NCBI RefSeq assembly: GCF_035594765.1
Contig: NC_085847.1
Coordinates: 5,828,001 to 5,892,000, forward strand
Direction: 5' to 3'
DNA from: Anolis carolinensis
Taxonomy: Eukaryota
DNA length: 64,000 nt
Under the pieces are notes generated by a model that was not told where the DNA came from, ran no database searches, and saw only the letters and a list, made by a program, of their open reading frames with translations. Both the position numbers and the translations under genes were made by a program. This document shows, piece after piece, positions 1,107 to 18,916 of this stretch. Each line of letters opens with the position of its first letter. The first letter of the stretch is position 1.

Positions 1107-1319
1107 TAATATGAAATGATAATGTAATAGTACAGTAGAATATAAGAAGATGCTGGCCAAGGCTAGGATGGTAGTGGCCCAAGGCTTTGGGGTCAAACCA
1201 GGGGAGGAAAATGCGTGACCTCGGTTGCCGTGTGACCTTTGGTGACCCTGGCCTGGGGCTGAGAGAGTGTGGCCCTTTGGGGATCCAGGCCCTCAAGGAT
1301 TGGGCATCTCTCCTTCTAG

Positions 1320-2252
1320 GTTATGCCAACGAGGTCGGGGAGTCCTTCCGGGCCATCGTCCCGGTCTCTTTGGTCTGGGCCAGTTATGGGGTGGCCACGG
1401 CGTACGTCACCGCGGATGCCGTCGACAAGGGCAAGAAGGCCGCCGCCCTCCAGGTAGGTGCCTTGACCCCACACGAGGCCCATTGCTTGGGTTCCGATGA
1501 CCCAAGGGTTCCCTGGACTCTGACGCCGCGTCCTTCCTCCTCCCGCAGGCCCAGCAGGGGGGCGGTGTGGCCAAGGAGGCCACGCTGGCGGTGGTGGACA
1601 CCTTCATCTGGCAGGCGCTGGCCTCGGTCATCATCCCCGGCTTCACCATCAACCGCATCTGCGCCGCCTCCCTCTACCTCTTGGCCTCGCGGACCCGGTG
1701 GCCCCTGCCCGTCCGCAAGTGGGCCACCACCGCCCTGGGCCTCTCCGCCATCCCCTTCATCATCAAGCCCATCGACCGGTAGGTTGCCCCTCCTCGGGGA
1801 TGATGGGACATTGGGCGGCAAGCAGAACCATCGATCCAATTCCAGCCATTTCCCCTTTTCACGAGGAATCTAGGGCAGCCATAAATCCATGTTCCCGGGT
1901 CCCATTGATCGCTCGCCTGCATCAGGACTTATCGATTGACTTTGCCCTGAAGCCGAGCATATAGCAGCTCACAAGCGCCACCTAGTGGCTTGGTTGTTAC
2001 AGCAGCTCCTTGTGACCCACTGGCACCACCTTGTCATCAGTGGCCTTAATATAAAATGAAATTAAAGAGAATTAAAGAGAATTAAATTAAATATAGAATT
2101 AAATTTCATATTTTAAAACCTTGTTATTCTTATGGGGAGTTTAGTACAGAGACGTTTTCCTTTTCTCATCCCGTAGGTCGGTGGATTTCTTGATGGACTC
2201 CAGCCTCCGGAAACTCTACAAAAGGGACGAGAAGCCCCCAACCTCCTTCTAA
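1320..2252 (+). CDS. MTFP1: Mitochondrial fission process 1 (MTP18), exons 2-4; exon 1 not found in the window (probably upstream)
   Basis: Exons 1320-1453, 1549-1778 and 2177-2252, all GT-AG and in phase. They translate GYANEVGESFRAIVPVSLVWASYGVATAYVTADAVDKGKK...VVDTFIWQALASVIIPGFTINRICAASL...KPIDRSVDFLMDSSLRKLY..., which closely matches MTFP1. AATAAA at 2389. Confidence 0.96.
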
Positions 2253-3282
2253 GGATGGCCGGGAGCCCACGGACTGTCTGCCTTCCCCAGGGCATTACCG
2301 TATGATTGTATTTTGGGGCGGGGGGTGAGGGTCTGGCCCTCGCCCCTTGTCTTTGGCAGGGAAGAGAACAATGTGAAATTCAACGTGCAATAAAGGAAAA
2401 CAACCACTTTCCACGGGGCCAGGACAATCTTCCTTCAGGTGGAAACAATGCCATCGGCCTCCGCTTGGGTCCGGAAACCCAAAAGGGAGGCAGAACTGGC
2501 TCTTAGTCTCAACATAAACACTTTGGTTTTATTTCTAAACTGGTTTTCGAAATAAAATAGTGTATATATGTTTATCCTTGCCTGTCTTTCTCCTTTCTCC
2601 AGCTCTGGGAATGTCTGCGTCACCACAACAGGCCAATCTGCTTGCTCATTTTCCTTCCCTCCTTGGCGGAGAAGGGAGAAAGCAGAGGGGCAGCAGTCCT
2701 GTGGAGATATTCCGAGGGAGGCCCTCTCAAAGCTGGGGAAGGGGGAATGTACGCCCTCTCAGAGGTGAAAGGAACAGGCCTTTTCAGAGCTGGAGGAGGG
2801 AGAAAGAAAGTGGGTAGGCACCAGACCCATAGAAACATTGTGTAATGGAGAAAAGAGAAAGTGGGCTCAGAACTGGAGAGGGGAGAAAGTAGACCCTCTT
2901 AGAGCTGGAGAACGTAAGCAGGCAGGGGTCCCAGAAACACATGATGTGGGCCCTCTCAGAGCTGGAGATGGGAGAAAGTAGGCCCCTGGGAGCTGGAGAA
3001 AGGAGAAAGTAGGTAGGCAGTGGCCCCAATGACATATGGCAACGCTGCGTAGATACACTGGTATCGATAGATAGGGAGACCCGGGACTGTGCTAGAATGG
3101 GAGGGGGTTCTCAAGAGCATCCAGTCTGACCCCTTTCGATAGGCAAAGCATGGGTTGGTCAAAGAGGACCCAGAGGCGGAGACATTTGGGAAATGGCCGT
3201 GGGCCTTTTTATTGACACTTCTGGGATGCAGTCCTCCTCCTCCTCAGGTGTCCTTTTTGGGGCTGTTGTTCTGGAGCTTGCA

Positions 3283-5512
3283 CTAGTTGAGGGGGGACTC
3301 CTGCTCGATCTCCTCTCTGATGGCCAGGGCCCCGGCCAGCGTCTGCAGCTCCATGTGCTCGGCCCGGTCCCCACTCAGCAGCCAGTATTTCCTGCTGTGG
3401 CGCAGGTGGTGGAAGAGGGCCAGGCCCAGGGCCACGAGGGTGCCCAGCACGCAGCTGCCCACAAAGACCGCGCTCACCACCAGCAGCTTCTTCACCGTCT
3501 GGCCGTGCCCTGGGGGGGGGAGGGGGGGCACACAGAGGCAGCAAAAGCTATCAGCACACGCCAGCGCTTGCACCATGTCATCCCCCTCCTCCTCCAATGA
3601 GGAGGAGCCCCACTGGTGTCCAAGGGGGAGGACAGGCCACCTACCTTCCAACCAGGGCAGCCCTTCCTTCCTTAGGCGCAGAGGACCCAGGGCCACCCAG
3701 TGGAGCTGCCCTTTGCCCACAAAGCCTGCAAGGAAAGAGAGCAAGAGGGCGGTTGGGGGGGCTGGCGGAGGGCGGTTGGGGGGGCTGGCGGAGGGCGCCA
3801 GGCCTTCCCGGGAGGGTTGGGCTGAGCAGGAGGAGGCCAAGGCCGAGGCACCTTGGGGATGGTCAAGGGGACCGGGCTCCGAGGGGCAGACGCCATGGCA
3901 GCAGAGGCAGACCGAGGGACGAGAGGGCTCATCCACGTTCTTCCATCTAGGAGAGAAGAGCGTTTGGTAAGACAGAGCTGGGGAAGGGAGGAAGGAGGCC
4001 TCCTTCTCAAGGCTGGAGAAGGGAGAGAGAAAGCAGAACTCACAGGGCTGAGGTGACGTTGTAGGAGCAGGTCTTCTTCCCAGGACTGGCTGGGCTCTTC
4101 TGACTCCAGGCCGCAAGTAAACAATGAACATGGATCTGGCGGAAGAAACCCCAACACACACCACTTTGGCATCTCGGCTTAGCAAAACGAGGGGTGTCTG
4201 GGGAGCTGCGGCCCATTGGGAGGGACACCTGCCCGCCTCGTGCCTACCTCGGGGGTTTTGTCATCCAGCCAGAAAGCGCGGGTCTGCATGGTCAGCACCA
4301 CGGCCGGGTCCTCTTGACGGAACCAGGCCGCCTTCAAGTTGCCGGGGTAGAGGCACCTGCGGGGCAAAACCAGGGGTCACTTCACCCCAGAAATGGTTCC
4401 AAAGTGGAAAGGACATCCATCCGAGCAGCAGAAAGGAGTCCCAATGGGAAGGACATCCTCCAGGAGAGTCCAGTTTTGTCCAAAGGATGAATGGATAACC
4501 TTGGGATTGGTCAGACGTATACTGATAGATACCAACTAGACTGTTGGGACTGCTGCCTTCCCCCTTCCCCAGCTCTGAGGAGGCCTCCTTTCTCCTGCTA
4601 CAAGAAGACTTCCTGCTTTTTCCCTTCTCTAGCTCTGAGAAAGGCCTACTTTCTCCTTTCCATAGCTCTGAGGTCCACTTTCTCCCTTCTCCAGCTCCAA
4701 GATATCTATGAATGTCCCCTTTCTCCAGCTCGGAGGCCTGCTTTCTCCCTGCCCCAGCTCTGAGGGTGGCCTCCCAGTGCCGCCCAGCTCACCCATGGTT
4801 GTCCACAATGAAGAAGAGTGCCCGGGACTGGCTCTGTTGTGGGTTGTCCAGCACGTAGCATCTGTCTATGAACAGTTTCGGGAAGAACCCGGCTTCTGCC
4901 TGGAGGGAGGCCTGGATCCGGATGGCTTCGCCTTGGAGGTAAGCGCCGGGTTCCACCGAGACACTGAGGTCCTCTGCGGGAATAATCATAATAATAATAA
5001 TAACAACAACAACAACAAGTACCACCTCCCAGCAGCAAAGAACTGGTGAGATCACAAACCTGCAAAACTATTGGAAAATGAGCACACAAAGATACTGTGG
5101 GAACTGACAAAGTTATGGAACACAACACACCAGACATCACAGTGGTGGAAAAGAAAAAGGTTTGGATCATTGATGTCGCCATCCCAGGTGACAGTCGCAT
5201 TGACGAAAAACAACAGGAAAAACTCAGCCGCTCTCAGGACCTCAAGACTGAACTTCAAAGACTCTGGCAGAAACCAGTGCAGGTGGTCCCGGTGGTGATG
5301 AGCACACTGGGTGCTGTGCCAAAAGATCTTAGCCGGCATTTGGAAACAATAGACATTGACAAAATTATGATCTGCCAACTGCAAAAGGCCACCCTGCTGG
5401 GATCTGCGTGCATATCCGAAAATACATCACACAGTCCTAGACACTTGGGAAGTGTTCGACTTGTGATTTTGTGATACGAAATCCAGCATGTCTATCTTGT
5501 TTGCTGTCATAC

Positions 5513-5573
<61 letters not shown>

Positions 5574-5658
5574 CACACAGTCCTAGACACTTGGAAAGTG
5601 TTCGACTTGTGATTTTGTGATACGAAATCCAGCATATCTATCTTGTTTGCTGTCATAC

Positions 5659-5696
<38 letters not shown>

Positions 5697-5783
5697 ATCA
5701 CACAGTCCTAGACACTTGGGAAGTGTTCGACTTGTGATTTTGTGATACGAAATCCAGCATGTCTATCTTGTTTGCTGTCATAC

Positions 5784-5841
<58 letters not shown>

Positions 5842-5928
5842 CACACAGTCCTAGACACTTGGAAAGTGTTCGACTTGTGATTTTGTGATACGAAATCCAG
5901 CATATCTATCTTGTTTGCTGTGTCATAC

Positions 5929-5966
<38 letters not shown>

Positions 5967-7162
5967 ATCACACAGTCCTAGACACTTGGAAAGTGTTCGA
6001 CTTGTGATTTTGTGATACGAAATCCAGCATATCTATCTTGTTTGCTGTGTCATACAATAAAATAATAATAATATTAAATTGATTTGTATCCCGCCCAATC
6101 TCCCAGTGAGCAAACCTTCAATGCCTAGATAGAATGAAAACCAGAAAGGAGAGAGTTGGGTGTCATCTGCATATCTGAGATACCGAACTCCAAGACTCCG
6201 GGTGCGAGGTCTGCATGAAGCCCAAGAGACTCACCGTTGAGGAGCTGGAGAGAGAAGTTCAGCTCCGGCCCCATTTTGACGCGGGTAGCACAGACATGGG
6301 CCTGGGTTGGAGATGGTGTCGTCGTCGTCGCCGCTGCCACCGCCGGGGCCTTGGGTGCCGCCACTTGGGTGGCATTGGCAGAACCGCTCCACACCAGATG
6401 TATGGCCGCTGGTGAACAGAGGGAGAACAGAGGGGTCACAATGGAAATCTTGAACAGGACAGGTCCCCAGAAAGCGGGGAAGGAGCCCATCTCACCGTGA
6501 AACATCTTTCTGAAGAAGCCCGTCTTCCCCTTGGCAACATCCACGGGGAGAGTCAAGGAATCATCTTCAGCCAAAACTTGGGCAACTGGAAAGACACAAC
6601 AGGGATTGGCATGGCTGGGAAAGGCTTTGGCCCATGGGTCAGACTAGAGGGCCTTTGGGGGTCCCTTCCAACTTCTAAACAGTTCTCTGGGGCAGCCCTT
6701 AGATACCCACTTGGCACCACTCTTATTATTATTATTATTAATAATAATAATTATTATTAAATATAAAATATAAATAAATATAATCATACTATAATTATAT
6801 CATATAATGTAATACAATATATATTTACACTTTTCTTGGCACCATTCTTATTATTAGAAGGAGTAAATATAACAATATCAATAAATATAATCATACTATA
6901 ATTATATCATATAATGTAATTCAATATATATTTACACTTTTCTTGGCACCATTCTTATTATTAGGAAAAGTAAATATAACAATATCAATAAATATAATCA
7001 TACTATAATTATATCATATAATGTAATTCAATATGTATTTACAGTTTTCTTGGCACCATTATTATTATTAGGAGGAGTAAATATAACAATATCAATAAAT
7101 ATAGTCATACTATAATTATATCATATAATACAATATATATGTATTTACACTTTTCTTGGCAC

Positions 7163-7200
<38 letters not shown>

Positions 7201-7312
7201 GGAAAAGTAAATATAACAATATCAATAAATATAATCATACTATAATTATATCATATAATATAATACAATACATATATTTACAGTTTTCTTGGCACCATTA
7301 TTATTATCATCA

Positions 7313-7351
<39 letters not shown>

Positions 7352-7385
7352 GGAGGGTAAATATAACAATATCAATAAATATAAT

Positions 7386-7445
<60 letters not shown>

Positions 7446-8061
7446 ATCTCAGTGGCAACCCTTAAGATACCAATTTGGTACCCTTGTTATTGGTAGTAGT
7501 AGTAACAGTAGCAAATATAACAATATAACTAAACATAACCATACTATAATACTCTAATGCAATAATAATACAGTATATAATTATATAATATATAATATTA
7601 GATAGCCACTTTCCATTATAATTAATTATTATTATTATTATTTACAATAACAATGTAATAATATGATACTATATCAGTATATAATATACTATACACACAC
7701 ACACACAATTCTCTGTGACACCCCTTGGCATTATTATTATTATTAGTAGTAGTATTCAATATTAGAGAATAATAATATAAAACAATATCATGTACCACTT
7801 AAAATCTATTCATCTTGTATTTAATTCTATCTATGCTACTTTTCTCTTAAAAGAAATACAATTCAAAAAGCAGTCCAAGACAACATGAAAGCTGCCTTAA
7901 AATGAATTCCATTGTGGACCCCAAGAAAGTCCTCAATGGAAGGGCTTTGGTCCAACGTCAAGTGGTGGGGAGTTCCACAGCGTTCGAAAGGCAGATACAA
8001 AGGCAGACTTACGCAGGACGAAGGCCCAAAGGGCCACGAGGTCTCTCCGGCCACAAGCCAT
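3283..8061 (-). CDS. ZP3-like gene B: signal peptide + Ala/Thr linker + stand-alone ZP-C domain + TM helix (about 365 aa, 9 exons)
   Basis: Exons 8061-8013, 6585-6496, 6408-6235, 4973-4793, 4356-4248, 4135-4044, 3946-3852, 3725-3645 and 3509-3283. All are GT-AG and sum to 1098 nt with no internal stop. Signal peptide MACGRRDLVALWAFVLLAQVLA. ZP-C motifs LNFSLQLLNED, KLFIDRCY, FIVDNHGC, IHVHC, KTCSY and ZP3-type CLCCHGVC. EHP-like VALGPLRL. TM LLVVSAVFVGSCVLGTLVALGLALF. AATAAA (- strand) at 3213-3208. Confidence 0.88.
5018..6072 (+). mobile_element. R4/Dong-type 3' fragment followed by four more tandem copies of its 3'-terminal ~90 bp, separated by (TAA)n
   Basis: 5018-5512 is near-identical to 9165-9660. 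The unit CACACAGTCCTAGACACTTGG...GCTGTCATAC recurs at about 5572, 5695, 5839 and 5964. Confidence 0.9.
6710..7445. repeat. AT-rich ~105-140-bp minisatellite (about 6 copies) ending in (TA)n(TG)n, intron 1 of ZP gene B
   Basis: Unit TTTTCTTGGCACCATT(ATT)n...AAATATAACAATATCAATAAATATAATCATACTATAATTATATC. Confidence 0.92.
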
Positions 8062-8242
8062 TCTAAAGGACTGAAGCCAAGGAGCCTTGGGTCCTCTTTA
8101 AGACACCTTCCCATCCAAGACAAATGGGAGGCACCTGGGCCCAGAGTGGGAGTCACTGGGAGGCAACAGGTGCAAAAGAAATGGTAGGAAATTGCCCTTG
8201 AAAATGTACCATGAATACTAATAGGGTCAATAATAATAATGA

Positions 8243-9662
8243 TATCAGCATGGAGTTTGGTTTGGACAAATGTTGGACAGTGGCATTGAAGAAGGGAAAA
8301 ATCATTGAAAGTGAGGGCATCAATATGCCCAATGGCCAAACAATAAAGTGTCACCAGCCAGAGGCCTATAAATATCTGGGCATATTACAACATCAAGCAT
8401 GAACATGTGAAAACCGTGGTCAGCAAAGAATACACACAAAGGGTCAGAAAAATTCTCAAAAGCAAGCTCAATGGAGGCAACACCATCAAGGCCATAAACA
8501 CCTGGGCCATACCTGTCATAAGATATACTGCTGGCATCATAAACTGGACACAGGCGGAACTGGACAATTTGGACAGAAAAACAAGAAAACTCATGACCAT
8601 TCATCATTCCCTGCACCCCCGCAGTGATGTTGACCGGCTATATCTGCCTCGAAGATCAGGGGGCAGAGGACTCTTACAAGTAAAGCAAGCAGTCAAAGAA
8701 GAAGAACATGCCCTGGCAGAAGATGTCAAGCAAAGTGAAGAACCTGCTTTGATTGAAGTCAAAAATCAGAAACTCCTCAAAGCACAGCAGACAAAAAACC
8801 AGTACAAGAAAACCGCACTGCAAACTAGAGCTGACAGCTGGCACAAGAAAACATTGCATGGAAAGTTCCTTGACAAAATGGAAGGAAAAGCTGATAAGGA
8901 GAAGACCTGGTTATGGCTCACAAATGGGACCCTGAAGAAGGAGACAGAAGGCCTGATCCTTGCAGCCCAGGAGCAAGCCATCAGAACAAAGGCAATTCAG
9001 GCCAAGATTGAAAAATCAGCTGATGACCCAAAATGCAGACTGTGCAAGGAAACCGACGAAACCATGGATCATATCCTCAGCTGTTGTAAGAAAATCGCAC
9101 AGACAGACTACAAACAGAGGCACAACTATGTGGCCCAAATGATCCATTGGAACTTATGCCTCAAGTCCCACCTCCCAGCAGCAAAGAACTGGTGGGATCA
9201 CAAACCTGCAAAAGTATTGGAAAATGAGCACGCAAAGATACTGTGGGACTTCCGAATCCAGACTGACAAAGTTCTGGAACACAACACACCAGACATCACA
9301 GTTGTGGAAAAGAAAAAGGTTTGGATCATTGAAGTCGCCATCCCAGGTGACAGTCACATTGACGAAAAACAAGAGGAAAAACTCAGCCGCTCTCAGGACC
9401 TCAAGATTGAACTTCAAAGACTCTGGCAGAAACCAGTGCAGGTGATGGGCACACTGGGTGCCGTGCCAAAAGATCTCAGCCGGCATTTGGAAACAATAGA
9501 CATTGACAAAATTACGATCTGCCAACTGTAAAAGGCCACCCTGCTGGGATCTGCGTGCATCATCCGAAAATACATCCCACAGTCCTAGACACTTGGGAAG
9601 TGTTTGACTTGTGATTTTGTGATATGAAATCCAGCATGTCTATCTTGTTTGCTGTGTCATAA
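8243..9662 (+). mobile_element. 5'-truncated R4/Dong(Rex6)-type non-LTR retrotransposon, inactive
   Basis: RT C-terminus (YKYLG, GGRGL), CCHC knuckle (CRLCKETDETMDHILSCC) and REL endonuclease (RHN, PDITVV...IIEVAIP). Premature TAA at 9529-9531. TAA-rich flanks. Confidence 0.88.
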
Positions 9663-10786
9663 AATAAAATAATAATGAAATAATAATGAAATAATAAATA
9701 ATCAAATAAGATGACTACTCATACCCAAATAATAACTAACAAGGAAGTAACAACCATCCAAGAAGGCTGCTACTAATAATCAAATAATAACAACAACTAG
9801 CAATGAAATAGTAAATAATCAAAGAAGATTGCTACTAATAGATAAACATAATCAAACAATAATAACAAAAAATTAAAGAATAATGTATCGTCAAATAAGA
9901 CTGGTACTGCCATTACTATTATGTACTCCTACTAATGGATAATCAAATAGTAATAATAATAACATAAATATGGCTACTATTACTAACACTGCTAGTGATA
10001 AAGTTTCCAAACAATGCATATGGAAATCAATTCATTCACATATATGTGTGTGTTATATCTAGTTGTTAATAAATAAATAATAAATAAAAATAAATGTGAG
10101 ACTCCATAACCTTGTAATGTACTTAGAGAAGGAAGTCATGGAACTCTGGGATTTGTAGTTTGAGGAGATGCTGGCCCTAGCTCACCAAACTGCAAATCCC
10201 ATGAGTGTAAATGGCCTCAGAACGTTATCCCTGGGGCAACATAAAGGCCGTTGGAATAATTTTAAAAAATATTTCCTGGCCCCCTTGTGGGATATATAGT
10301 TCTGCAAGGGACTTAGACCTGGATGTTTAGGGGCTTTCCAGTTTCAAGAACCTTTGGGGGAGATTCCATCCCAGAGATGTCCCTTGAAAACCCTTCCGAC
10401 AGAGAGAGGCTTTGTAGGGCCAGCTAAACTACAAATCCCAGGGTTTGATGAGCATTGATATGAGTCATAAGTGTATGTATCATAAGGCTTTGGGAATGTT
10501 ATTAATCATAGTATTGCTATTTATACCCAGCTTTCCTCTCTTCAACAAGGCTCAACTGTGGAGTACAACTCCCAGAACCCCCGTTTCGAGCCAATCCACG
10601 GACAATGAAGTCACATACACAAACAGTCATGTTTCAGGGCTTTATTATGAGGATTTTGGGGGACATTCCCCTTGGCTTGGATAGTCCGTGGCCGTTGCTT
10701 CTCCAGTTGCCCAGGCCTTGTTTTGTAGAAGCAGGAGCCCAATAAGAGGAGGGGTGAAGTGGCCATTTCCCCGACGGACGGCGGCA

Positions 10787-13700
10787 TCACACCTGAAAAA
10801 AAGAGGAAGAAGTGTGGGAAGAAGAACACCGTCACCAGATGCTCACTTTCCAATAGCTGGCTAGAGAAAGTCAAGTAGAGGATGGGTGAAGATGTAGTTT
10901 GCTCTAGATTACAGTCAAGAGGATCATCAATAGGATCATGAGGAACATCTAGAGAGACCCGATTGACCAAAGCTGGTCTACGTGATGGCCATGAGGAATA
11001 TATTATCCAAGGTTGGTCTGCATTGTGGCCACGAGGGACATCTAAAGGAACCATAACAACCAAGGTTGATCTACATTGTGGACCTGAGGAACATAGAGGG
11101 ACCATAATTCCAGGTTGGTCTACATTATGGAGCTGAGGCAAAGTCTCACCTGGCCTTTGGGTCTCCTCCGGAGGGCAAAGGAGCTGTTGGCAACCCACTC
11201 GTAATGCCCGGCGTTCGGAGACCGTCTCCGAACGGTCACTTGGCCCACCCCCATCTCGGATGCCAACCTTGGAGAACCTGAAGCAGGATGAGAAGGGAGA
11301 ACTTGGAGGCCGGATGGAGAGGGGAGAAAGGGCCCCGACTCGGCCTTGAACGGGCACCGCACCTTTGAGGCCCCGCTTGTGCCGAAAGCTGGGCGGTTGG
11401 CACACTGAGTCACAGCATTGGCAGAAGGGACTGTTGAGATCATCCAAGAGTTCCCACCTAAGAAGAAAGGAAGAAGGTCCACCTGGAGGTCGTCTTCTCT
11501 GCACTTGGAGGGCATCCATGTTATCCAGCAATAGCACTCGAATCCCTCTTTAATGGCCCAGCTCTATTTTATGGGATGCTGGGATTTGTAGTTTGGTGCC
11601 CCCATTAGAGAAGAGCTGTCAGTTCAGGGCAGCGAACCAGAGCAATGGTGCTCCACCTTGGGTTCTCCAGATGTCTCATACTACTTTGGACTTTAGCAAG
11701 CAAGAGATAATTCTACGTACACCCCAAACTACAAAACCCATGGCAGCCAAGGTTATGGAAATGTGGACTCAGGGTCAAAGGAGCATTACCGCTTGAGGTC
11801 CCGATGAAAGGAACACGCTTTCCTGGTGGGGTGAGCGAGGATGTTGGGGTCCCAGGCTGAAATCCGGCAATGGAGGTAGACCTGGAAAAGGGGAAGTCCA
11901 CATTCCCCATCAGCTCCAAGGCCCCAGGCATCCCTCTTCCATACAATGGTCAGTAGAGACCCTCTTGACCTTCCTCAGGTCTACGCCATGGCTGTGAGGA
12001 ACATCTGGAGAACCTCCCGTTGTCCCCAGACCACACAAGGCTAGGCTCTAAGGGGCTTTGATGTCTTCCGTCCATGTACTTACATCATTGTGAAGGCCAA
12101 GAAATTCAAAGGCTTGCAAAGAGAGGCGGAGGGTTCCAGGGGTTCTTCTTGGGAGAAACTGTGAATCGGCCCCCTTGCCGTCCACAAAGCACCTGCCCCG
12201 AGACAAAAGAAGGCGCCTTTGAGTGGCTGAATGAGGAAGGAAGCTGAATTCGCCACAGAAGGGGAAAGGAATCCAAAGCATATCTTGAGATGGACCCTTG
12301 GATGCCTCCTCCAAAGTTCAGGCTAAACCCCGGAGTGGATTCACAGCTCTGCCAGCCAGGACAGATGCCCCTAAGTGTCCACTCACCCATAGTTGGCAAT
12401 AACGGTATAATTCCTGAGGGACCGGCTCAGTTCTGGAGATGTCGCTGCCACACATTCGTCAACAAAGACCCTCAAGGGCTGGTGGAAGGAGGCCTTCACC
12501 CCAAACTCCAGGTGGATCTGTGAGCCTAGGAGGAAGGCTGCCGAGGCGGAGGGGGCACGGAAGTCCTCTGTGGAAGGAACCGGTGCCAGGGACTTAGGAT
12601 GGGCATTGCCAGCTCCTGTCCCTCAAGGAGCTTTCCCTTACCTTTCATGAACGTTGCCGTGAACACCAGCCCACCGGATGCCAAGAGCTGGCCCTTCACC
12701 GATGTCACCTGTGCTGGAACCCATGGCTCGGACCTAGAAGGCACAAAAGGGGAAGGCACAAAAGGGGGAGACCCAAGGAGGTGTACCCAAGGACACCCCT
12801 TCCCAACATCCCCATGAAACCCCCTTGAAAGAGCCTGGCAACATTGGGCACAAGGACCCAAGGCTTACCCGTAACGGGTGCAGTTGATCCGCTCTGTGAA
12901 CGGGCGGTTATAGAGTCCGCTCTGGCTGTACAGGGGGCTGTGGACCAGGTAGGCGGAGTACTCCACCATCTTGACAGACCTCTGCAAGAACCCAAAATAA
13001 TGTCCTCAAGATGCCCAAGGAACCCTCCGTGGTTTGAGAGTTCGCCTACAGCGCCCATTGCCGTAATCGCACACAACCCAACACACACCCTCCCCAAGGT
13101 TGGGGATGTTCCTCATGGCCATGATTTAGACCAAACTTGATCAGTAGAGTCCCTCTTGACGTCCCTCTGGTCTACATCATGCCCACAAGGAAGATCTGGA
13201 GGATCACACCGACCAAGGTTGGGCTACTTATGACTATGAGGACCATCTACAGGGACCACATTGACCAAGGTTGGTCTACATGATGGCCACGAGGAACAAA
13301 GGGACCATATTGACCAAGGGTGGGCTACATTCAGGACAAGGAACATCTAGATGGACCATATTAACCAAGGCAGAGCTATAGCATGGCCATAAGGAAGCTC
13401 TGGAGATCTCCAGGCCATGCATAGCCCACCGAAGCAAGCCCCTCCCCATTCGCCCACTGGGTCTGAGGGCCCAAGGTGGGCTCCCCTCCCATCGCCAGGC
13501 CTTTGGCCACTCACTCACCAGCCGAGCAAAGCCACACTCAGTCAGGCGGTACTCAAAGTGGAAGAGGCGCTGCTGGGCGTTGGCGGAGGACGGGGGACAG
13601 GTGCCCAGGCGCAGGTCCTGGGGGTCCAGCTCCATCCCGGTGCCCCATGGGTCCATTGGAAGCACAAGGTGGACGCTGGTCTGGTTGCACTCATACAGCA

Positions 13701-13899
13701 CCGAGGTGGAGGGCACTACGGGAAGGAGGGAGGGGAGATGATAGCAGCTGTAGTCCAAGGCAGCCCCTTCCCCAGCCTTGAGGCAATGGTTTTGGGGAGC
13801 TTTGAGGAGGCCAATGCCTGTCCCCTTCTTACCTCTCTGAGCCACAGCGAGCGCCAGGCTGCAGGCCAGGCCCACCAGGCCCATCACACCAGACTCCAT
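10787..13899 (-). CDS. ZP3-like gene A: signal peptide + ZP-N + ZP-C + furin site + EHP, no TM (about 359 aa, 10 exons)
   Basis: Exons 13899-13833, 13715-13519, 12981-12869, 12733-12642, 12567-12387, 12192-12084, 11881-11790, 11457-11363, 11277-11150 and 10792-10787 (GTG TGA), 1080 nt in frame. ZP-N Cys in YECN, GTCP, TECG and INCT. ZP-C motifs FLLGSQIHLE, PLRVFVDECVA, VIANYGCFVDG, VYLHC, KACSF and CQCCDSVC. Furin site RHKR. EHP-like MGVGQVTV. AATAAA (- strand) at 10646-10641. Confidence 0.9.
10930..11130. repeat. Degenerate ~50-bp tandem repeat in ZP gene A introns (also about 11950-12010 and 13140-13410)
   Basis: CCAAGGTTGGTCTACAT..TGGCCAC.AGG.ACATCTA.AGGGACCAT recurs. Confidence 0.75.
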
Positions 13900-16840
13900 C
13901 TTGGTCCTTCCTGCTTTCCTTCCTTCCTTCCTTCTTTTCTCCTTTAAGCCCTGGAAGAAGTCAGGCTCTCTGCCCCAGCTGTGCCTTGGCCCTTTCTGCT
14001 TCCCAGTCTGACCCAGGTGCTGGGCATTCTGGCCCAATCAGCTTCCCTTCCAGCAGGCTGAGGAGGCAGCAGCAGGACTCCAACTCCCATCACCCCATGT
14101 CAAACTCAAGCAAGGCTGATAGAAAGAAATGGCTCTGGTTCCTTGCGGGGTCTGGTTGCCGGCCTCCAGGTCCTGGTGGGCTATGCTGCTGGGGGAGGAT
14201 GGGAGCTCTTCCCTCGCCTGCACTCTGCACATGCTCAGGGGTGCTGTCCCTTTCTGTGTAGGGCTCCTCAAACCAAGAGTTGCAACAGCTGCAAATGGTT
14301 CAGGAAAAGACCACTGGCTCACACTGGGATTCTTGTTCCTGGGTCAGGAATGTTCTTCTTTCCAGGAGAGGAGGCCTTCCTTCCCTTTGAGCAACACAGG
14401 GATTGCTTACAGGCATGCTTCAGGCAGGACTGGGAATGGTTTGACTACAACTCCCAGCATTCCTTATCTCCACCTGGGTTTGTAGGGACTGCAATTAAAC
14501 CACTCACCCTGCCCCCCACTGAGAACTGTATTTGCCAACCTCTGTTTCAAGTTCTTGCAATATTTGATAATGAGATGTCTTTATATCCCTGTCACTCTAT
14601 GCATTCCCGAGGGCTTTCCGAGCCAAGGGAGTGCGGAAAGAGAGCCTGGTCTTTGCTGGTGGGAGACCGCCAGCAAAGACCAGGCTCTCTTTCCGCACTC
14701 CCTTGGCTGCAGCCCAACCAGGGCTGACCCTGCTTAGCTTCCAAAACAAGGCCTTTGGGGTATTGTTTTCACCTCAGTGGCAATGCCATAGAGGACTCTC
14801 CAGAGCCTGTTCCTTCCCCTGATATACCTTGGTCGGCCTCCCATCCAAGTCCCAACCAGGGCTGTCCCTGCTTAGCTTCCGAAATGATCATCCAAGGCCC
14901 CTCAAAAGACTTTGATGCCAGTCCCCTTCCTCCCCAAGAAGAAACGGAGGCAAGGCTGGAAAACGGTGGAACAAAACCTCTGTATTCAAAAAAACCAGTC
15001 TGATATACAGTATAATGTATTTTACAACACTCTAGTGAACTTTTTATTGTATTGTATTGGACACACGCAGAAGATGGGACAGTGGGGAGAAGGAGTGGGG
15101 GAACGGAGGCACGGAGAGAGGCTCCCCTGGTTGACCTGGCACCGCAAACGTCGGGGGCCTCGGAAGGGCTTCCCCCCATTTATGCCTTCAGTGACCCCCC
15201 CCCCCCCAATAAAGGAAGTATGCTGGTCCTCACCAGATCCTATCATTTGTGTCCAAAGAGGGAAATCCTGGGATCCTCAAACCATGGGTTTTGGAGGAAG
15301 ACGTTTCTGGGCCCAGATCTCAATTCGACAGGGTTTCCATATCAGTCGGCCCTTCTACCTGCTGGAGATTGGGGTGTATAGCACACACAAATAGGCAAGA
15401 CTTTGGACCTTTGTTCCTATATATATATATATATGTCTAATACTATATAGAGAGTACAGTTTCCCTTAACTGGGTTGTCGGCAGAGACTCAAAGGTTGTC
15501 GTCTCCTGTCCATTTAGGCTGAAACAGTTTACGAATAAATAAAACAAACACTTACAACGATGAGAAATAGATTACGGCGCATGCCTCGAGGCGGCTTAGG
15601 AAGGGGAAACATGGGGGCAGGGGGCACAAACAAGTGGTCTTCACCGGTGTTGGACAAGAAGGTTCCGGATCAGAAATCGGTAAGCACCAGAATGTGATTA
15701 GAACAAAACAGGCTTGTGAAGAGCTGGTGGCCCCGCTCTTGAGTCCCAGCAAAAGGCATCACTTTGGGAACGAGAGGGAAAGAAATGCCTGAGGTCGGCC
15801 TCGGCATCCCTACGCTGCAGCCTTGACTCGGTGGGACGGGTTCTCTAGGCTTTTCCAAGCTCTCCATAAAGCATCCCAACGGGGGCCATTTCCTTGGGGC
15901 GGCTTCTTCCATTCTGGACCCAAGGAAATCGGAAAACACGCTCAGTAACGCACTCGGTAACGCACTCGTAATCAACCCGAACTGGGAAAAGGCCTCTCTT
16001 TTGGGATTCCACCTCCCAGAGAACCCTCCTTCAGGAGTTGTTTCCCCCCAAAAGGGTGGCTTTTCCAAGCTTGAAGCAAAATACTCTTATCGATTTGGTC
16101 TTAGGCATTAACAACACATTGGGGGGGGGGGGGGGGGAATAACACTTTGAGAAGGGTCGACATACAAGGGGGACAGACAGACAAACAGTTACGGCTTATC
16201 CGTTCCCTTGTGTCTACACTGGGAACATAGGATGGTTTTCTAATGATCTAAAAATGGACGCTTTCTGTCGAAAGACTGAACTGTAATTCTTGTTCCTTCA
16301 GATGTTGCCAAAATATCTGTAGGACCCAAGACGGAGAAGCCGTAACAGAATTGCTTCCGGTTTGTGATGTAGTGAGGCCCATATTGTACGGTTCTTAAGG
16401 AACGTGCTCTCGACTGTTGCTTAAGAATCACACAGATGGGGAAATAGGCAACTGTTTGTCTGTCTACAAACACTGGAAACAGAGGAAGCAGAAACAAGGG
16501 AAGAGAGAATATTGCGGACGACCACGGTGTCTTTCTTGGTGTTGTGGTCTGTTATTGTTTGCTCTGCTCTTTAGTGTTGCAGCTCAGAATCTGCACAGCA
16601 TCAGGTTCACACAGAAGCCTTTGCCAAGGTGACGGGGAGATATTTTGTTTCTCGGCTGCTCAATCTAGTTGCTTCTCGACGTGGTCTGGTGTTGAAACCG
16701 GTCGGCACACTCTCGGGTGGCACGATGGCAACATGGCCGACCCCCAAAAAATACGAGGAAGGATTGAAGGAAGGGGAATGGGAAGGATAAGCACCAGGCG
16801 GTCCTCGCGGTGGGTCAGGGAGAGGGGCCGGCGCCCACGC

Positions 16841-18916
16841 CTACCACTTGAGGAAATCCCGCACTCGGCTCCAGAGCTTGGTGATCCACAGGTTGACTCC
16901 TAAGTCCGTCAGGTACTGGATCTCGGGGGTCAGCATCTTGCGGCACAGCTTGCGGTGCTTCTTGTGGATGCGCTTCTTGAGGTTGTAGCCCAGGATGGAC
17001 TTCTCGCCCAGGGGCTGCCAGGGCTGCATGGCGGACTCCTGGATGGCGTTGGCGTCCACGGGGCGGCCCCCGTCGATGCAAATGCGGGTCATCTTCTCGT
17101 TCTCCTCCTGGAGGCGGGCCACGTCCTCGGCCATGCGCTCCCTCCCGTAGGCCTCCACCTTGCGCCAGAACGTGGCGTTGAAGTGCCGGTAGAGCTTGGC
17201 GTCAATGAGGTTCCAGGCGGTGGCCTTCTGGTAGAGCTCGCCCGTCAAGCGGGAGACGGTGGAGTCCTTCCGGGCGTTGAGCTTGAAGTAGAGGACGTCC
17301 TCCAGCTCCCAGCAGAGCAAGTCCTTGAGGAGCACCAGGGACTCGTCAAAGTACTCCAGGAGCATGACCAAGTGGAAGCGCTGGTCGATCTCTTGGATGG
17401 ACTGCTCCACCCGGGGGCTGCTGGGGTTCAGGGTGTTGTCGTAGCCCAGGTCAAAGAAGAGCAGGTTCTGCAGGTAGTGGGCGTTGAAGCCGTTGGGGTC
17501 GTAGTAGCGCCAGGGGTCCCGCAGGAACTCGGCCAGCTTGTCCTCCCCGGAGAGCTTCCAGGTCAAGGGAATGATGCGCCCAAAGTAGTGGAAGGAGGAC
17601 TCAAAGAGGTACGCCGGGTCCCGCAGCACCGTCACAAAGGTGGCGCCGGCCGGCAGCAGCTTGCGCACCTCCTCGTACTGGAAGCGCATGTGGTTGCAGA
17701 TGATGTTGAAGCACATGCCCGGGCGGTAGTCCCGCACCTGGCTGCGCTCAAAGAAGGACGGGTAGTAGAAGTCGTTGCGGCCGTTGGGGAAGGCAAACTT
17801 GAGGCGGTGCTTCTCCCCAAAGCGGAAGAGGATGTTGAGGATGGTGCTGCTGGCTGTCTTGTGGGTCTTCATGAACATGATGTCCCGCTTGGGGAGGCAC
17901 CTGCGGCCCGAGAGGCTGCGGCTGGCGTTGGAGGAGGAGGGCAGGCGGGCCGGGGCACGGAGGGAAGAGCAAGCCGAGGGGATGGGCGTCCTGGAAAAGA
18001 AAGGCCAAAGGTCAAGGCCTGCCCCTCGCATCCACCCTCAAGAATGCTCCGGCTCCTTTCCCAAAACTATGCCTTCTAAGCATTGAATGCTCACATGTGG
18101 GACTCTAGGACTATCCTGTGGTCAAATTAGACAACTGTCAGGTGAAAATAGACGAGTTGAAGTGCAATGACACCCATCTCCTAGTAAGGAGGTGTAGGAT
18201 TTCCCTAGTTCTCCAACCCAGCACTCTTCACAGAGGGAACTGCAGGGACTGCAAGGGGCATCTAGTCTAACCCTCCTACTCTTTGAGGAACTGCATTGAG
18301 GAGGCCCTTACTGTCTGAAGAACCATGTCCCACTACCAGCCGCCCACGTTTTGCAGATGGGCTTGCAGTGAGCAGAGCCGGTCCAACAATGAGGTGAATT
18401 AAGCGGTCGCTTCGAGCGCAAAACATACAGGAGCGCAGTCAAGACTGCTTTTTCTGTTGATTTGTTGTAAAACATGATGTTTTGGTGCTTAATCTGTAAA
18501 ATCTTAATGTAATTTGATGTTTAATAGACTTTTCCTTAATCCCTCCTTATTATCCAACATTTTTGCTTATCCAACGCTTTTATTTTTCAGTGATTGGTTT
18601 GGGGGGGGGGGTGCCAAAATTCTGTCCGCCTACACTTGAAAAATACCTAGGGCCAGCTTTGGCAGTGAGGCAGCTCACGCCGATCAGGGAGACCCTTCCC
18701 CGCTCCCGTCCTGTGGCAAGGATGCCCGAACTCCCCTTCCAAAGGGAAAGACCTCCCCTCCGCCCCCCAGGGCCAGCTCACTCACTCGGTCATGCTGACT
18801 TGCAAGGGCGAGATGGCGTAGGAGTAGAGCAGCAGCATGAAGCTGGTCAGGAGGGTGCCCAGCGCCAGGCCCTTGCCCATGGAGCGCCAGTTCTTCCCCT
18901 GCGGCAGCATGGCCAT
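16841..18916 (-). CDS. GAL3ST1: Galactose-3-O-sulfotransferase 1 (cerebroside sulfotransferase), about 426 aa
   Basis: Coding exons 18916-18786 (MAMLPQGKNWRSMGKGLALGTLLTSFMLLLYSY, type II anchor) and 17990-16841 (PAPS motif FMKTHKTASSTILNILFRFG, TVLRDP, C-terminus LCRKMLTPEIQYL...DFLKW). Syntenic with PES1. Confidence 0.97.
18445..18580. mobile_element. Internal fragment of the same Tigger-like MITE family
   Basis: AACATGATGTTTTGGTGCTTAAT...TTCCTTAATCCCTCCTTATTATCCAA is shared with 960-1050. Confidence 0.7.

What the first reader, a model, noticed from the sequence alone, without database searches (positions are those of the whole stretch)
3283..13899. Complementary tandem pair of ZP3-like genes: anchorless full ZP module plus membrane-anchored ZP-C-only partner
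Seen: two adjacent same-strand genes, each with its own ATG, signal peptide and AATAAA. Their ZP-C exons have identical sizes and phases (181/109/92/95 nt) despite low protein identity. Gene A = SP, ZP-N, ZP-C, RHKR, EHP, stop, with no TM. Gene B = SP, linker, ZP-C, EHP, TM and a ~40-aa tail, with no ZP-N and no furin site between the Cys cluster and the EHP. Established: canonical ZP3 carries all of these parts in one chain, and ZP filaments assemble at the membrane after cleavage releases the EHP, through ZP-N/ZP-C contacts between subunits. Inference: an old duplication partitioned ZP3 functions. A may be the soluble polymerising subunit and B a non-shed membrane tether, nucleator, end-cap or secretion chaperone, together forming an undescribed two-component egg-coat or apical-matrix system.
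Basis: partly seen in the sequence, partly recalled or inferred. Interest (0 to 1): 0.9.

Follow-up and report, generated by a model that had tools for sequence, protein, structure and literature searches.

The report
Lizard ZP3.2 plus ZP-C-only neighbour
In the green anole, an egg-coat gene (ZP3.2) that has lost its membrane anchor lies next to an old, unnamed land-vertebrate gene encoding only the second half of the egg-coat module tied to the membrane, and separate events millions of years apart shaped the two, not one division of labour.

Summary
Two minus-strand genes lie between GAL3ST1 and MTFP1, and both are RefSeq models of Anolis carolinensis. Gene A (13899-10620) is XP_008118026, the published "ZP3.2". 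It has a signal peptide, ZP-N, ZP-C, RHKR, the external hydrophobic patch (EHP) and a stop, with no transmembrane helix (TM). Gene B (8061-3283) is XP_008118025. It has a signal peptide, a Ser/Thr/Pro-rich linker, ZP-C, EHP, TM and a 42-aa tail, with no ZP-N and no furin site. The ZP-C exons measure 181/109/92/95 nt in both genes.

The "partitioned functions" reading is not supported. ZP-C-only B genes occur at the same locus in newt, crocodile, turtles, birds, geckos, monotremes, opossum, tenrec and sloth. They form one clade that follows the species tree. A orthologues in geckos, turtles, Phrynosoma and amphibians still carry a TM exon. Both anoles lost it through a 5-nt donor shift, so the next exon reads GTG TGA over a decayed TM relic. 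Duck, opossum and tenrec have B with no A beside it. Between the two anoles A has omega 0.21 and B 0.51.

B is best read as a ZP3-lineage counterpart of TGFBR3L: an uncleaved, surface-retained, stand-alone ZP-C protein. I found no paper describing it.

The parts
13833..13899 (-). Gene A (ZP3.2) exon 1: ATG and signal peptide
   Evidence: Exact match to P0001 aa 1-22, GT donor
13519..13715 (-). Gene A exon 2: first half of ZP-N
   Evidence: P0001 aa 23-88. PDB hit to fish ZP3 8BQU at E 2e-9. Pfam ZP-N
12869..12981 (-). Gene A exon 3: second half of ZP-N
12642..12733 (-). Gene A exon 4: interdomain linker and first ZP-C strand (internal hydrophobic patch)
   Evidence: Ends in the same phase as gene B exon 3
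12387..12567 (-). Gene A exon 5, 181 nt, ZP-C
   Evidence: Pfam PF00100 at E 8e-7. PDB ZP3 at E 5e-11
12084..12192 (-). Gene A exon 6, 109 nt, ZP-C
11790..11881 (-). Gene A exon 7, 92 nt, ZP-C
11363..11457 (-). Gene A exon 8, 95 nt: C-x-CC-x3-C cluster and RHKR furin site
11150..11277 (-). Gene A exon 9, 128 nt: EHP and the conserved GHYEW segment. Its donor lies 5 nt further 3' than in gecko, so the exon ends in phase 0 instead of phase 1
10620..10793 (-). Gene A last exon. It reads GTG TGA (V, stop). In the +2 frame it holds a decayed homologue of the ancestral TM and tail exon. AATAAA is at 10646-10641
   Evidence: Same state in A. sagrei (L001 about 16053-16210)
8013..8061 (-). Gene B exon 1: ATG and signal peptide
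   Evidence: P0185 aa 1-16, GT donor. Conserved ORF and donor in A. sagrei L001 18127-18175
6496..6585 (-). Gene B exon 2: end of signal peptide and the conserved GFF motif
6235..6408 (-). Gene B exon 3: Ser/Thr/Pro/Ala-rich linker and first ZP-C strand (LNFSLQLL). Positional homologue of A exon 4
4793..4973 (-). Gene B exon 4, 181 nt, ZP-C
4248..4356 (-). Gene B exon 5, 109 nt, ZP-C
4044..4135 (-). Gene B exon 6, 92 nt, ZP-C
3852..3946 (-). Gene B exon 7, 95 nt: C-x-CC-x3-C cluster, no furin site after it
3645..3725 (-). Gene B exon 8, 81 nt: EHP (…VALGPL…)
3283..3509 (-). Gene B exon 9: juxtamembrane segment, TM helix, 42-aa cytoplasmic tail with the ELQ..AL motif, stop
3208..3213 (-). Gene B polyadenylation signal AATAAA

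Best explanation
The stretch holds two separate, functional genes whose complementary look comes from two unrelated events.

Gene A is the anole orthologue of the known ZP3.2 egg-coat subfamily. In the Anolis lineage the donor of its EHP exon moved 5 nt. The ancestral TM exon is still spliced on, but it is now read as V-stop and serves as 3'UTR. The protein is therefore secreted without an anchor, as teleost ZP3 proteins are.

Gene B belongs to an old, unnamed, tetrapod-wide family. It was born by tandem partial duplication of a ZP3.2-like gene, from the linker/first ZP-C strand exon through the TM exon. It then gained new 5' exons for a signal peptide and a mucin-like linker.

Inferred function of B: it is a type I membrane glycoprotein. 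With no furin site it keeps its EHP clamped on the ZP-C domain, stays on the cell surface and does not polymerise. It would act as a docking or receptor protein, working like TGFBR3L, betaglycan or endoglin, and not as A's dedicated partner.

Shown: gene structures, orthology, synteny, domain content, the cause of the TM loss, and purifying selection. Inferred: surface retention, the non-polymerising state, and the receptor or docking role. The tissue of expression is unknown.
For: - Identity: A's exons equal XP_008118026, which Feng et al. 2018 (PMC6262864) use as Anolis ZP3.2. B's exons equal XP_008118025.
- A orthologues with a TM exon of the motif MPPAVGALLLEV…FCFYNG occur in 15+ species.
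- Gecko's EHP exon ends in phase 1 (AAA G|GT) and its TM exon starts GT GGA AAA CAG AAC GTG ATG. Both anoles have AAA GGC CAG|GT and then GTG TGA. The TM frame is shortened and polar.
- B family: 13 orthologues from newt to sloth have no Pfam ZP-N (0 of 12 scanned) and ZP-C in 10 of 12. No ZP-N relic was found in B loci of 5 species.
- B-family features: 8 ZP3-type Cys, a conserved EHP, a TM and a tail motif. RX[KR]R is present in 0 of 13 B proteins against 20 of 25 A-family proteins.
- A B-family profile hits only the ZP-C halves of ZP3 chains in the PDB, at E 2e-28. The B model's best fold matches are ZP3, then betaglycan and ZP2 ZP-C.
- Tree: the B clade and the A clade each have support 99*, and each mirrors the species tree.
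- Synteny: the order GAL3ST1 - A - B - MTFP1 holds in the window. Parts of it are seen in A. sagrei, crocodile and gecko (A - B - MTFP1) and newt (B - MTFP1).
- B gene structure is conserved in gecko, crocodile and opossum.
- Selection between the two anoles: A omega 0.21 (CI 0.13-0.31), B omega 0.51 (0.38-0.69), B ZP-C plus EHP 0.37. All B exons, splice sites and the ORF are intact in both species.
- B without A: duck, opossum and tenrec.
- Architectural precedent: TGFBR3L has a signal peptide, one ZP-C, a TM and a short tail, and is an inhibin B co-receptor (PMC8673766).
Against:
- All B orthologues are computed gene models. The current RefSeq version of anole B (P0002) starts at MFH and lacks the signal-peptide exon.
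- Gnomon fuses A and B in A. sagrei, platypus and echidna, so read-through transcripts may exist.
- B of A. carolinensis evolves faster than B of A. sagrei: 43 against 17 unique changes, p 0.0008. It has lost a near-invariant juxtamembrane Cys and 5 TM residues, which could mean relaxed constraint.
- The B structure model is of low confidence (mean pLDDT 55.6).
- The receptor or docking role rests on architecture alone. A dibasic K-K next to the TM could still allow shedding.
Confidence: 0.7

Rival explanations
1. A and B are an obligate two-component system made by splitting ZP3 functions: soluble A polymerises on a membrane-bound B tether, nucleator or chaperone.
For: In Anolis the parts are complementary: A lacks a TM, B lacks ZP-N and a furin site. 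The genes are adjacent on the same strand. Gnomon fusions in three species hint at co-transcription.
Against: B lacked ZP-N long before A lost its TM, and most A orthologues keep the TM. B persists where no A gene lies beside it: duck, and opossum and tenrec within the 10 kb fetched. The rates of evolution are very different. The complex prediction gave no answer.
Confidence: 0.1
2. B is a general egg-coat assembly factor. It sits on the oolemma and, with or without shedding, caps or anchors filaments built from any ZP subunits through ZP-C contacts.
For: B is of ZP3 lineage with an intact ZP3-type Cys set and EHP. Chicken ZP1 and ZP3 are reported to associate through ZP-C domains (PMC4475693, abstract). 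B is conserved in egg-laying lineages and monotremes.
Against: With no furin site the EHP should stay bound and block strand exchange (mechanism from the UMOD filament work, PMC7737619, listed and not read in detail). B models also exist in tenrec and sloth. There are no expression or proteome data.
Confidence: 0.15
3. In Anolis carolinensis B is a decaying partial duplicate with no function.
For: Its rate is accelerated against A. sagrei. It has lost the near-invariant juxtamembrane Cys and has a 5-aa TM deletion. The current RefSeq model lacks the signal peptide. No RNA evidence was obtained.
Against: The 365-codon ORF is intact, all nine exons have canonical splice sites, and ATG and AATAAA are kept. 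Omega is 0.51 with an upper confidence limit of 0.69, and 0.37 in ZP-C plus EHP.
Confidence: 0.07
4. A and B are one transcription unit that makes a ZP-N, ZP-C, ZP-C, TM fusion protein, as in the Gnomon models of A. sagrei, platypus and echidna.
For: Fused models of 744, 720 and 722 aa exist.
Against: The A. sagrei fusion skips B's intact 92-nt exon and part of its 181-nt exon, and it runs through cryptic pieces. Anole A has its own stop and AATAAA. B has its own conserved ATG and signal-peptide exon. Duck and opossum B stand alone with their own signal peptides. Older platypus models are separate (P0034, P0191).
Confidence: 0.05

Closest known systems
ZP3.2 subfamily of vertebrate egg-coat genes (Feng et al. 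2018, PMC6262864; Xenopus zp3.2)
   Same: Gene A is the very protein used there as Anolis ZP3.2. It has ZP-N, a ZP3-type ZP-C, a furin site and an EHP, and it groups with Xenopus, newt, turtle and gecko ZP3.2.
   Different: The anole copy has lost the C-terminal TM through a splice-donor shift. Most tetrapod orthologues keep it.
TGFBR3L (inhibin B co-receptor; PMC8673766)
   Same: It has the same architecture as gene B: signal peptide, one ZP-C domain, a TM and a short cytoplasmic tail. It arose as a partial copy of a full ZP-module protein, and it is membrane-retained and non-polymerising. It is among the nearest clusters in the ESM Atlas.
   Different: B derives from ZP3.2, not betaglycan. 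The B profile hits only ZP3 in the PDB, and B carries the ZP3-specific C-x-CC-x3-C subdomain. Its ligand, tissue and function are unknown.
Nematode stand-alone ZP-C proteins (Weadick 2020, PMC7456536)
   Same: ZP-N was lost and ZP-C kept. A signal peptide is retained, basic cleavage sites are mostly lost, and the proteins are under long-term purifying selection.
   Different: The origin is independent. The nematode proteins are truncated or GPI-anchored cuticlin-type modules, whereas B is a vertebrate ZP3-type domain with a TM and a conserved tail.
Canonical ZP3 (chicken 3NK3/3NK4; fish 8BQU)
   Same: It shares the ZP-C fold, Cys pattern, and internal and external hydrophobic patches. Teleost ZP3 proteins also lack a TM, as anole A does (own knowledge).
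   Different: Canonical ZP3 has all parts in one chain. B lacks ZP-N and the cleavage site. A lacks the TM.

Membership tests
ZP3.2 subfamily (gene A) | Orthology by tree with Xenopus ZP3.2 and other tetrapod ZP3.2 | tested here: met
   The A clade has support 99* and includes Xenopus P0051. The accession equals the ZP3.2 query of PMC6262864.
ZP3.2 subfamily (gene A) | Conserved genomic neighbourhood | tested here: met
   GAL3ST1 - A - B - MTFP1 in the window. A - B - MTFP1 in A. sagrei, crocodile and gecko.
ZP3.2 subfamily (gene A) | Full ZP module: ZP-N with 4 Cys plus a ZP3-type ZP-C with 8 Cys | tested here: met
   Pfam ZP-N and ZP-C. Invariant Cys columns.
ZP3.2 subfamily (gene A) | Consensus furin site followed by the EHP | tested here: met
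   RHKR, then GVGQVTV.
ZP3.2 subfamily (gene A) | C-terminal TM helix | tested here: not met
   V-stop at the start of the former TM exon in both anoles. No hydrophobic C-terminus.
Polymerising ZP-module protein (gene B) | ZP-N domain | tested here: not met
   No Pfam ZP-N in 12 B proteins. No ZP-N relic in the DNA of 5 species.
Polymerising ZP-module protein (gene B) | ZP-C domain with internal and external hydrophobic patches | tested here: met
   Pfam PF00100. PDB profile hit at E 2e-28. Foldseek match to ZP3. Conserved MNFSLRVL and VGPL motifs.
Polymerising ZP-module protein (gene B) | Basic cleavage site between ZP-C and the EHP | tested here: not met
   RX[KR]R in 0 of 13 orthologues, minimal RXXR in 1 of 13.
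Stand-alone ZP-C membrane proteins of TGFBR3L type (gene B) | Signal peptide + single ZP-C + TM + short tail | tested here: met
   Signal peptides were judged by hydrophobicity only.
Stand-alone ZP-C membrane proteins of TGFBR3L type (gene B) | Descent from the betaglycan ZP-C | tested here: not met
   The nearest relatives are ZP3.2-type proteins.
Stand-alone ZP-C membrane proteins of TGFBR3L type (gene B) | Cell-surface residence and ligand binding | not testable with these tools
   Needs expression, surface biotinylation and binding assays.

The most novel reading that the evidence does not exclude
Gene B marks an undescribed, tetrapod-wide class of egg-coat-lineage proteins: a surface-retained, uncleaved ZP3-type ZP-C domain with a conserved cytoplasmic motif. 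It would work at the oocyte or another epithelial membrane as a receptor or assembly organiser. It is kept even in some placental mammals and in birds that have lost ZP3.2.
Probability: 0.3. Interest if true: 0.8.

Novelty: new variant of a known kind. Interest (0 to 1): 0.6.

Why it matters
ZP-C was long held never to occur without ZP-N. Nematode cases (2020) and TGFBR3L (2021) broke that rule. A conserved ZP3-derived, membrane-anchored ZP-C-only gene present from newts to mammals would be a third, independent case, and it sits inside the egg-coat family itself.

It gives a natural test of what an uncleaved ZP-C does on its own, whether docking, receptor or assembly control. It can be approached by knockout in species where genome editing has been reported, for example frog, chicken or brown anole (own knowledge).

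The anole ZP3.2 case also shows, base by base, how an egg-coat protein becomes anchorless, as teleost ZP proteins are.

For annotation, RefSeq names B "ZP3" or "uncharacterized" and sometimes fuses it with ZP3.2. Both practices hide the family.

Tried and rejected
Later work ran beside them.
- The look-up of sequencing runs. Runs are coded and their kind is only guessed. Shares of 0.14-0.24 could be exons or the high-copy repeats in the query, so this is not used as evidence of expression.
- Logan contig L005 encoding a duck B fragment. It is collinear with genomic DNA including introns, so it is not cDNA.
- Complex prediction, A ectodomain with B ZP-C. Verdict "no answer", so no evidence either way.
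- Single-exon searches of B against Pfam and the PDB found nothing. Only the full RefSeq proteins and the family profile did.
- The supplement of PMC6262864 held as text does not list the accessions.
- Paper searches for LOC ids, and for ZP-C-only wording in vertebrates, found nothing beyond nematodes and TGFBR3L/betaglycan.
- Joined step. No self-joined spliced model was handed to a search tool. RefSeq proteins returned by the tools were used instead. Joined A. sagrei coding sequences were built only inside local scripts, for dN/dS and the tree.
- Position of the B clade relative to lungfish, coelacanth and ray-finned ZP3.2-like genes is not resolved (support 84-88).

Full report
**What is there**

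The window is Anolis carolinensis. Exon translations from it are identical to two RefSeq proteins returned by the protein search: P0001 (XP_008118026.3, 359 aa) and P0002 (XP_008118025.2, 322 aa; older version P0185, 365 aa). Both genes run on the minus strand.

MTFP1 exons lie on the plus strand at 1187-1873. The main GAL3ST1 exon lies at 18031-16841 on the minus strand (Pfam E 2e-156). A cobalamin-binding-protein exon lies near 36.4-37.6 kb.

**Gene A**

Splice-site refinement that reproduces P0001 exactly gives ten exons:
- 13899-13833 (signal peptide)
- 13715-13519 and 12981-12869 (ZP-N)
- 12733-12642 (linker and first ZP-C strand)
- 12567-12387 (181 nt), 12192-12084 (109), 11881-11790 (92)
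- 11457-11363 (95; Cys cluster and RHKR)
- 11277-11150 (EHP)
- a last exon from 10793 that reads GTG TGA, with AATAAA at 10646

The exons hit ZP3 chains in the PDB, with fish 8BQU scoring better than chicken 3NK3, and Pfam finds ZP-N and ZP-C. XP_008118026 is the protein that Feng et al. 2018 (PMC6262864) name the Anolis ZP3.2.

**Gene B**

There are nine coding exons:
- 8061-8013 (ATG; n-region with two Arg, then a 15-residue hydrophobic core)
- 6585-6496
- 6408-6235 (Ser/Thr/Pro/Ala-rich linker, then the first ZP-C strand)
- 4973-4793 (181), 4356-4248 (109), 4135-4044 (92), 3946-3852 (95)
- 3725-3645 (EHP)
- 3509-3283 (TM, 42-aa tail, stop)

AATAAA is at 3213. The four ZP-C exons therefore have the same sizes and phases as in A. 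The junction phases before the first of them and after the EHP exon also match the ancestral A structure. A and B are 26% identical over 176 residues. Pfam sees only ZP-C in B.

**Why A has no anchor**

A orthologues in geckos, a skink, Elgaria, Varanus, Phrynosoma, turtles, a caecilian, newts and Xenopus end in a TM exon with the motif MPPAVGALLLEV…FCFYNG.

The anole window holds a homologue of that exon at 10793-10620, in a frame the mRNA does not use. It is five codons shorter and has polar replacements.

In gecko DNA the EHP exon ends AAA G|GT (phase 1), and the TM exon begins GT GGA AAA CAG AAC GTG ATG. In both A. carolinensis and A. sagrei the EHP exon ends AAA GGC CAG|GT (phase 0), and the next exon begins GTG TGA. 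The anchorless state is thus a frameshift at a splice donor. Both anoles share it, and Phrynosoma does not.

A is otherwise under purifying selection, with omega 0.21 (CI 0.13-0.31).

**B is an old family, not a local by-product**

An exhaustive HMMER search with P0002, plus naming of the hits, found close relatives in these species:
- Squamates: Hemicordylus, Paroedura, Phrynosoma
- Crocodile, turtles and birds: Crocodylus, three turtles, Anas, Pogoniulus
- Amphibian: Lissotriton
- Mammals: platypus, echidna, Monodelphis, Echinops, Choloepus

These relatives align from a short N-terminal extension onward.

Family-wide features:
- No Pfam ZP-N in any member; ZP-C in 10 of 12.
- Eight ZP3-type cysteines, a conserved first strand (MNFSLRVL), EHP (VGPL), juxtamembrane segment, TM and tail motif ELQ.VV.AL.
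- No RX[KR]R between the Cys cluster and the EHP in 13 of 13, against 20 of 25 in the A family.
- No significant ZP-N relic in the B loci or upstream spacers of five species.
- The family profile hits only the ZP-C halves of ZP3 chains in the PDB (E 2e-28).
- A low-confidence AlphaFold model (pLDDT 55.6) finds ZP3 first, then betaglycan and ZP2 ZP-C.

In a tree of 84 ZP3-type proteins, B forms one clade (99*) and A forms another (99*). Each follows the species tree. B joins the group of A, lungfish, coelacanth, gar/bichir and shark ZP3.2-like proteins at support 88. The duplication therefore happened at or before the tetrapod ancestor, but its exact node is unresolved.

The locus is conserved:
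- A - B - MTFP1 in A. sagrei, crocodile and gecko
- B - MTFP1 in newt
- GAL3ST1 - B - MTFP1 in duck, with no A relic
- B next to a SEC14-like gene in opossum and next to an unidentified minus-strand gene in tenrec, with no A relic within 10 kb

. The nine-exon structure recurs in gecko and crocodile, and eight exons in opossum.

**Is anole B alive?**

In A. sagrei all nine exons, the ATG/signal-peptide exon, every splice site and the ORF are intact.

Between the two anoles omega is 0.51 (CI 0.38-0.69), and 0.37 over ZP-C plus EHP. B evolves about four times faster than A at amino-acid level but is still constrained.

The A. carolinensis copy is the faster one: 43 against 17 unique changes, p 0.0008. 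It has lost a near-invariant juxtamembrane Cys and five TM residues.

The 744-aa A. sagrei Gnomon model that fuses A and B skips B's intact 92-nt exon and runs through cryptic pieces. I take it, and the monotreme fusions, as annotation chaining or minor read-through.

The anatomy is right. The history is not a partition. B lacked ZP-N while A kept its TM for the whole of tetrapod evolution; the amphibian-amniote split is roughly 350 My old by my own knowledge. A's loss is specific to the anole lineage, and B survives without A. An A+B complex prediction returned "no answer".

**How B most likely works (inference)**

In ZP-module proteins, cleavage at the basic site frees the EHP and licenses polymerisation through ZP-N and the linker. 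This is established knowledge, summarised in PMC7456536.

B has neither ZP-N nor the cleavage site. It does keep the EHP, a TM and a conserved cytoplasmic motif. It should therefore stay on the surface with a closed ZP-C.

The nearest working model is TGFBR3L. It has a signal peptide, one ZP-C, a TM and a short tail, and it is a non-polymerising co-receptor (PMC8673766). Betaglycan and endoglin are similar. A role as a membrane dock for egg-coat subunits remains possible.

**Novelty**

A is known. For B, full-text searches found stand-alone ZP-C proteins described only in nematodes (PMC7456536), and a 2022 vertebrate ZP paper cites only those (PMC9154058). Nothing was found on the B accessions or LOC ids. 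The library does not cover all journals.

**Limits**

- The sequencing-run table is ambiguous.
- Signal peptides were judged by hydrophobicity only.
- I handed no self-joined spliced model to any search tool. Joined A. sagrei coding sequences were used only in local scripts.

Noticed in passing
window 10620-10793 (-): The former TM and tail exon of ZP3.2 survives as a 3'UTR exon. Its old frame is still open (…MPPSVGEMATSPLLLLGSCFYK…) but is shortened and polar. The AATAAA lies inside that old frame.
   Followed up: yes
L002:2627-2854 (Crocodylus porosus): Downstream of crocodile ZP3.2 lies a diverged TM-like exon with an 11-aa insertion. The RefSeq crocodilian, snake and kiwi ZP3.2 models are TM-less. 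TM loss may have recurred, or those models may be incomplete.
   Followed up: partly
L001:10001-25713 (A. sagrei); P0037, P0188 (monotremes); P0212 (gar, 760 aa): Gnomon fuses neighbouring ZP3-type genes into single 720-760-aa 'uncharacterized proteins'. The A. sagrei fusion omits an intact B exon.
   Followed up: partly
window 6409-6495 (-), intron 2 of gene B: This 87-nt intron is open in frame and hydrophobic in both anoles, so intron retention would insert 29 residues without a stop. It can be mistaken for a signal peptide.
   Followed up: partly
window 5421-6077 and 6758-7351: Tandem arrays of 125-146-nt and 107-130-nt units, each carrying (AAT)n/(ATT)n runs, fill introns 3 and 1 of gene B.
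   Followed up: no
window 8407-9531 (+) and 5071-5474 (+): Retrotransposon fragments lie inside B introns. One is a 374-aa ORF with a weak zf-RVT hit (E 7e-4, below the Pfam cut-off). A second, shorter copy is nearly identical in its last 100 residues.
   Followed up: no
They lie in intron 1 of gene B and were left alone afterwards.
   Followed up: no
window 3283-3509 (-): A. carolinensis B has Gly where 90% of B proteins, including A. sagrei, have a juxtamembrane Cys. It also lacks 5 TM residues, and its branch is significantly faster than that of A. sagrei.
   Followed up: partly
window 16841-18031 (-), 36378-37583 (+), 1187-1873 (+): Neighbouring genes: the main GAL3ST1 exon, a cobalamin-binding (transcobalamin-like) exon, and MTFP1 exons. 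MTFP1 converges tail to tail with gene B.
   Followed up: partly
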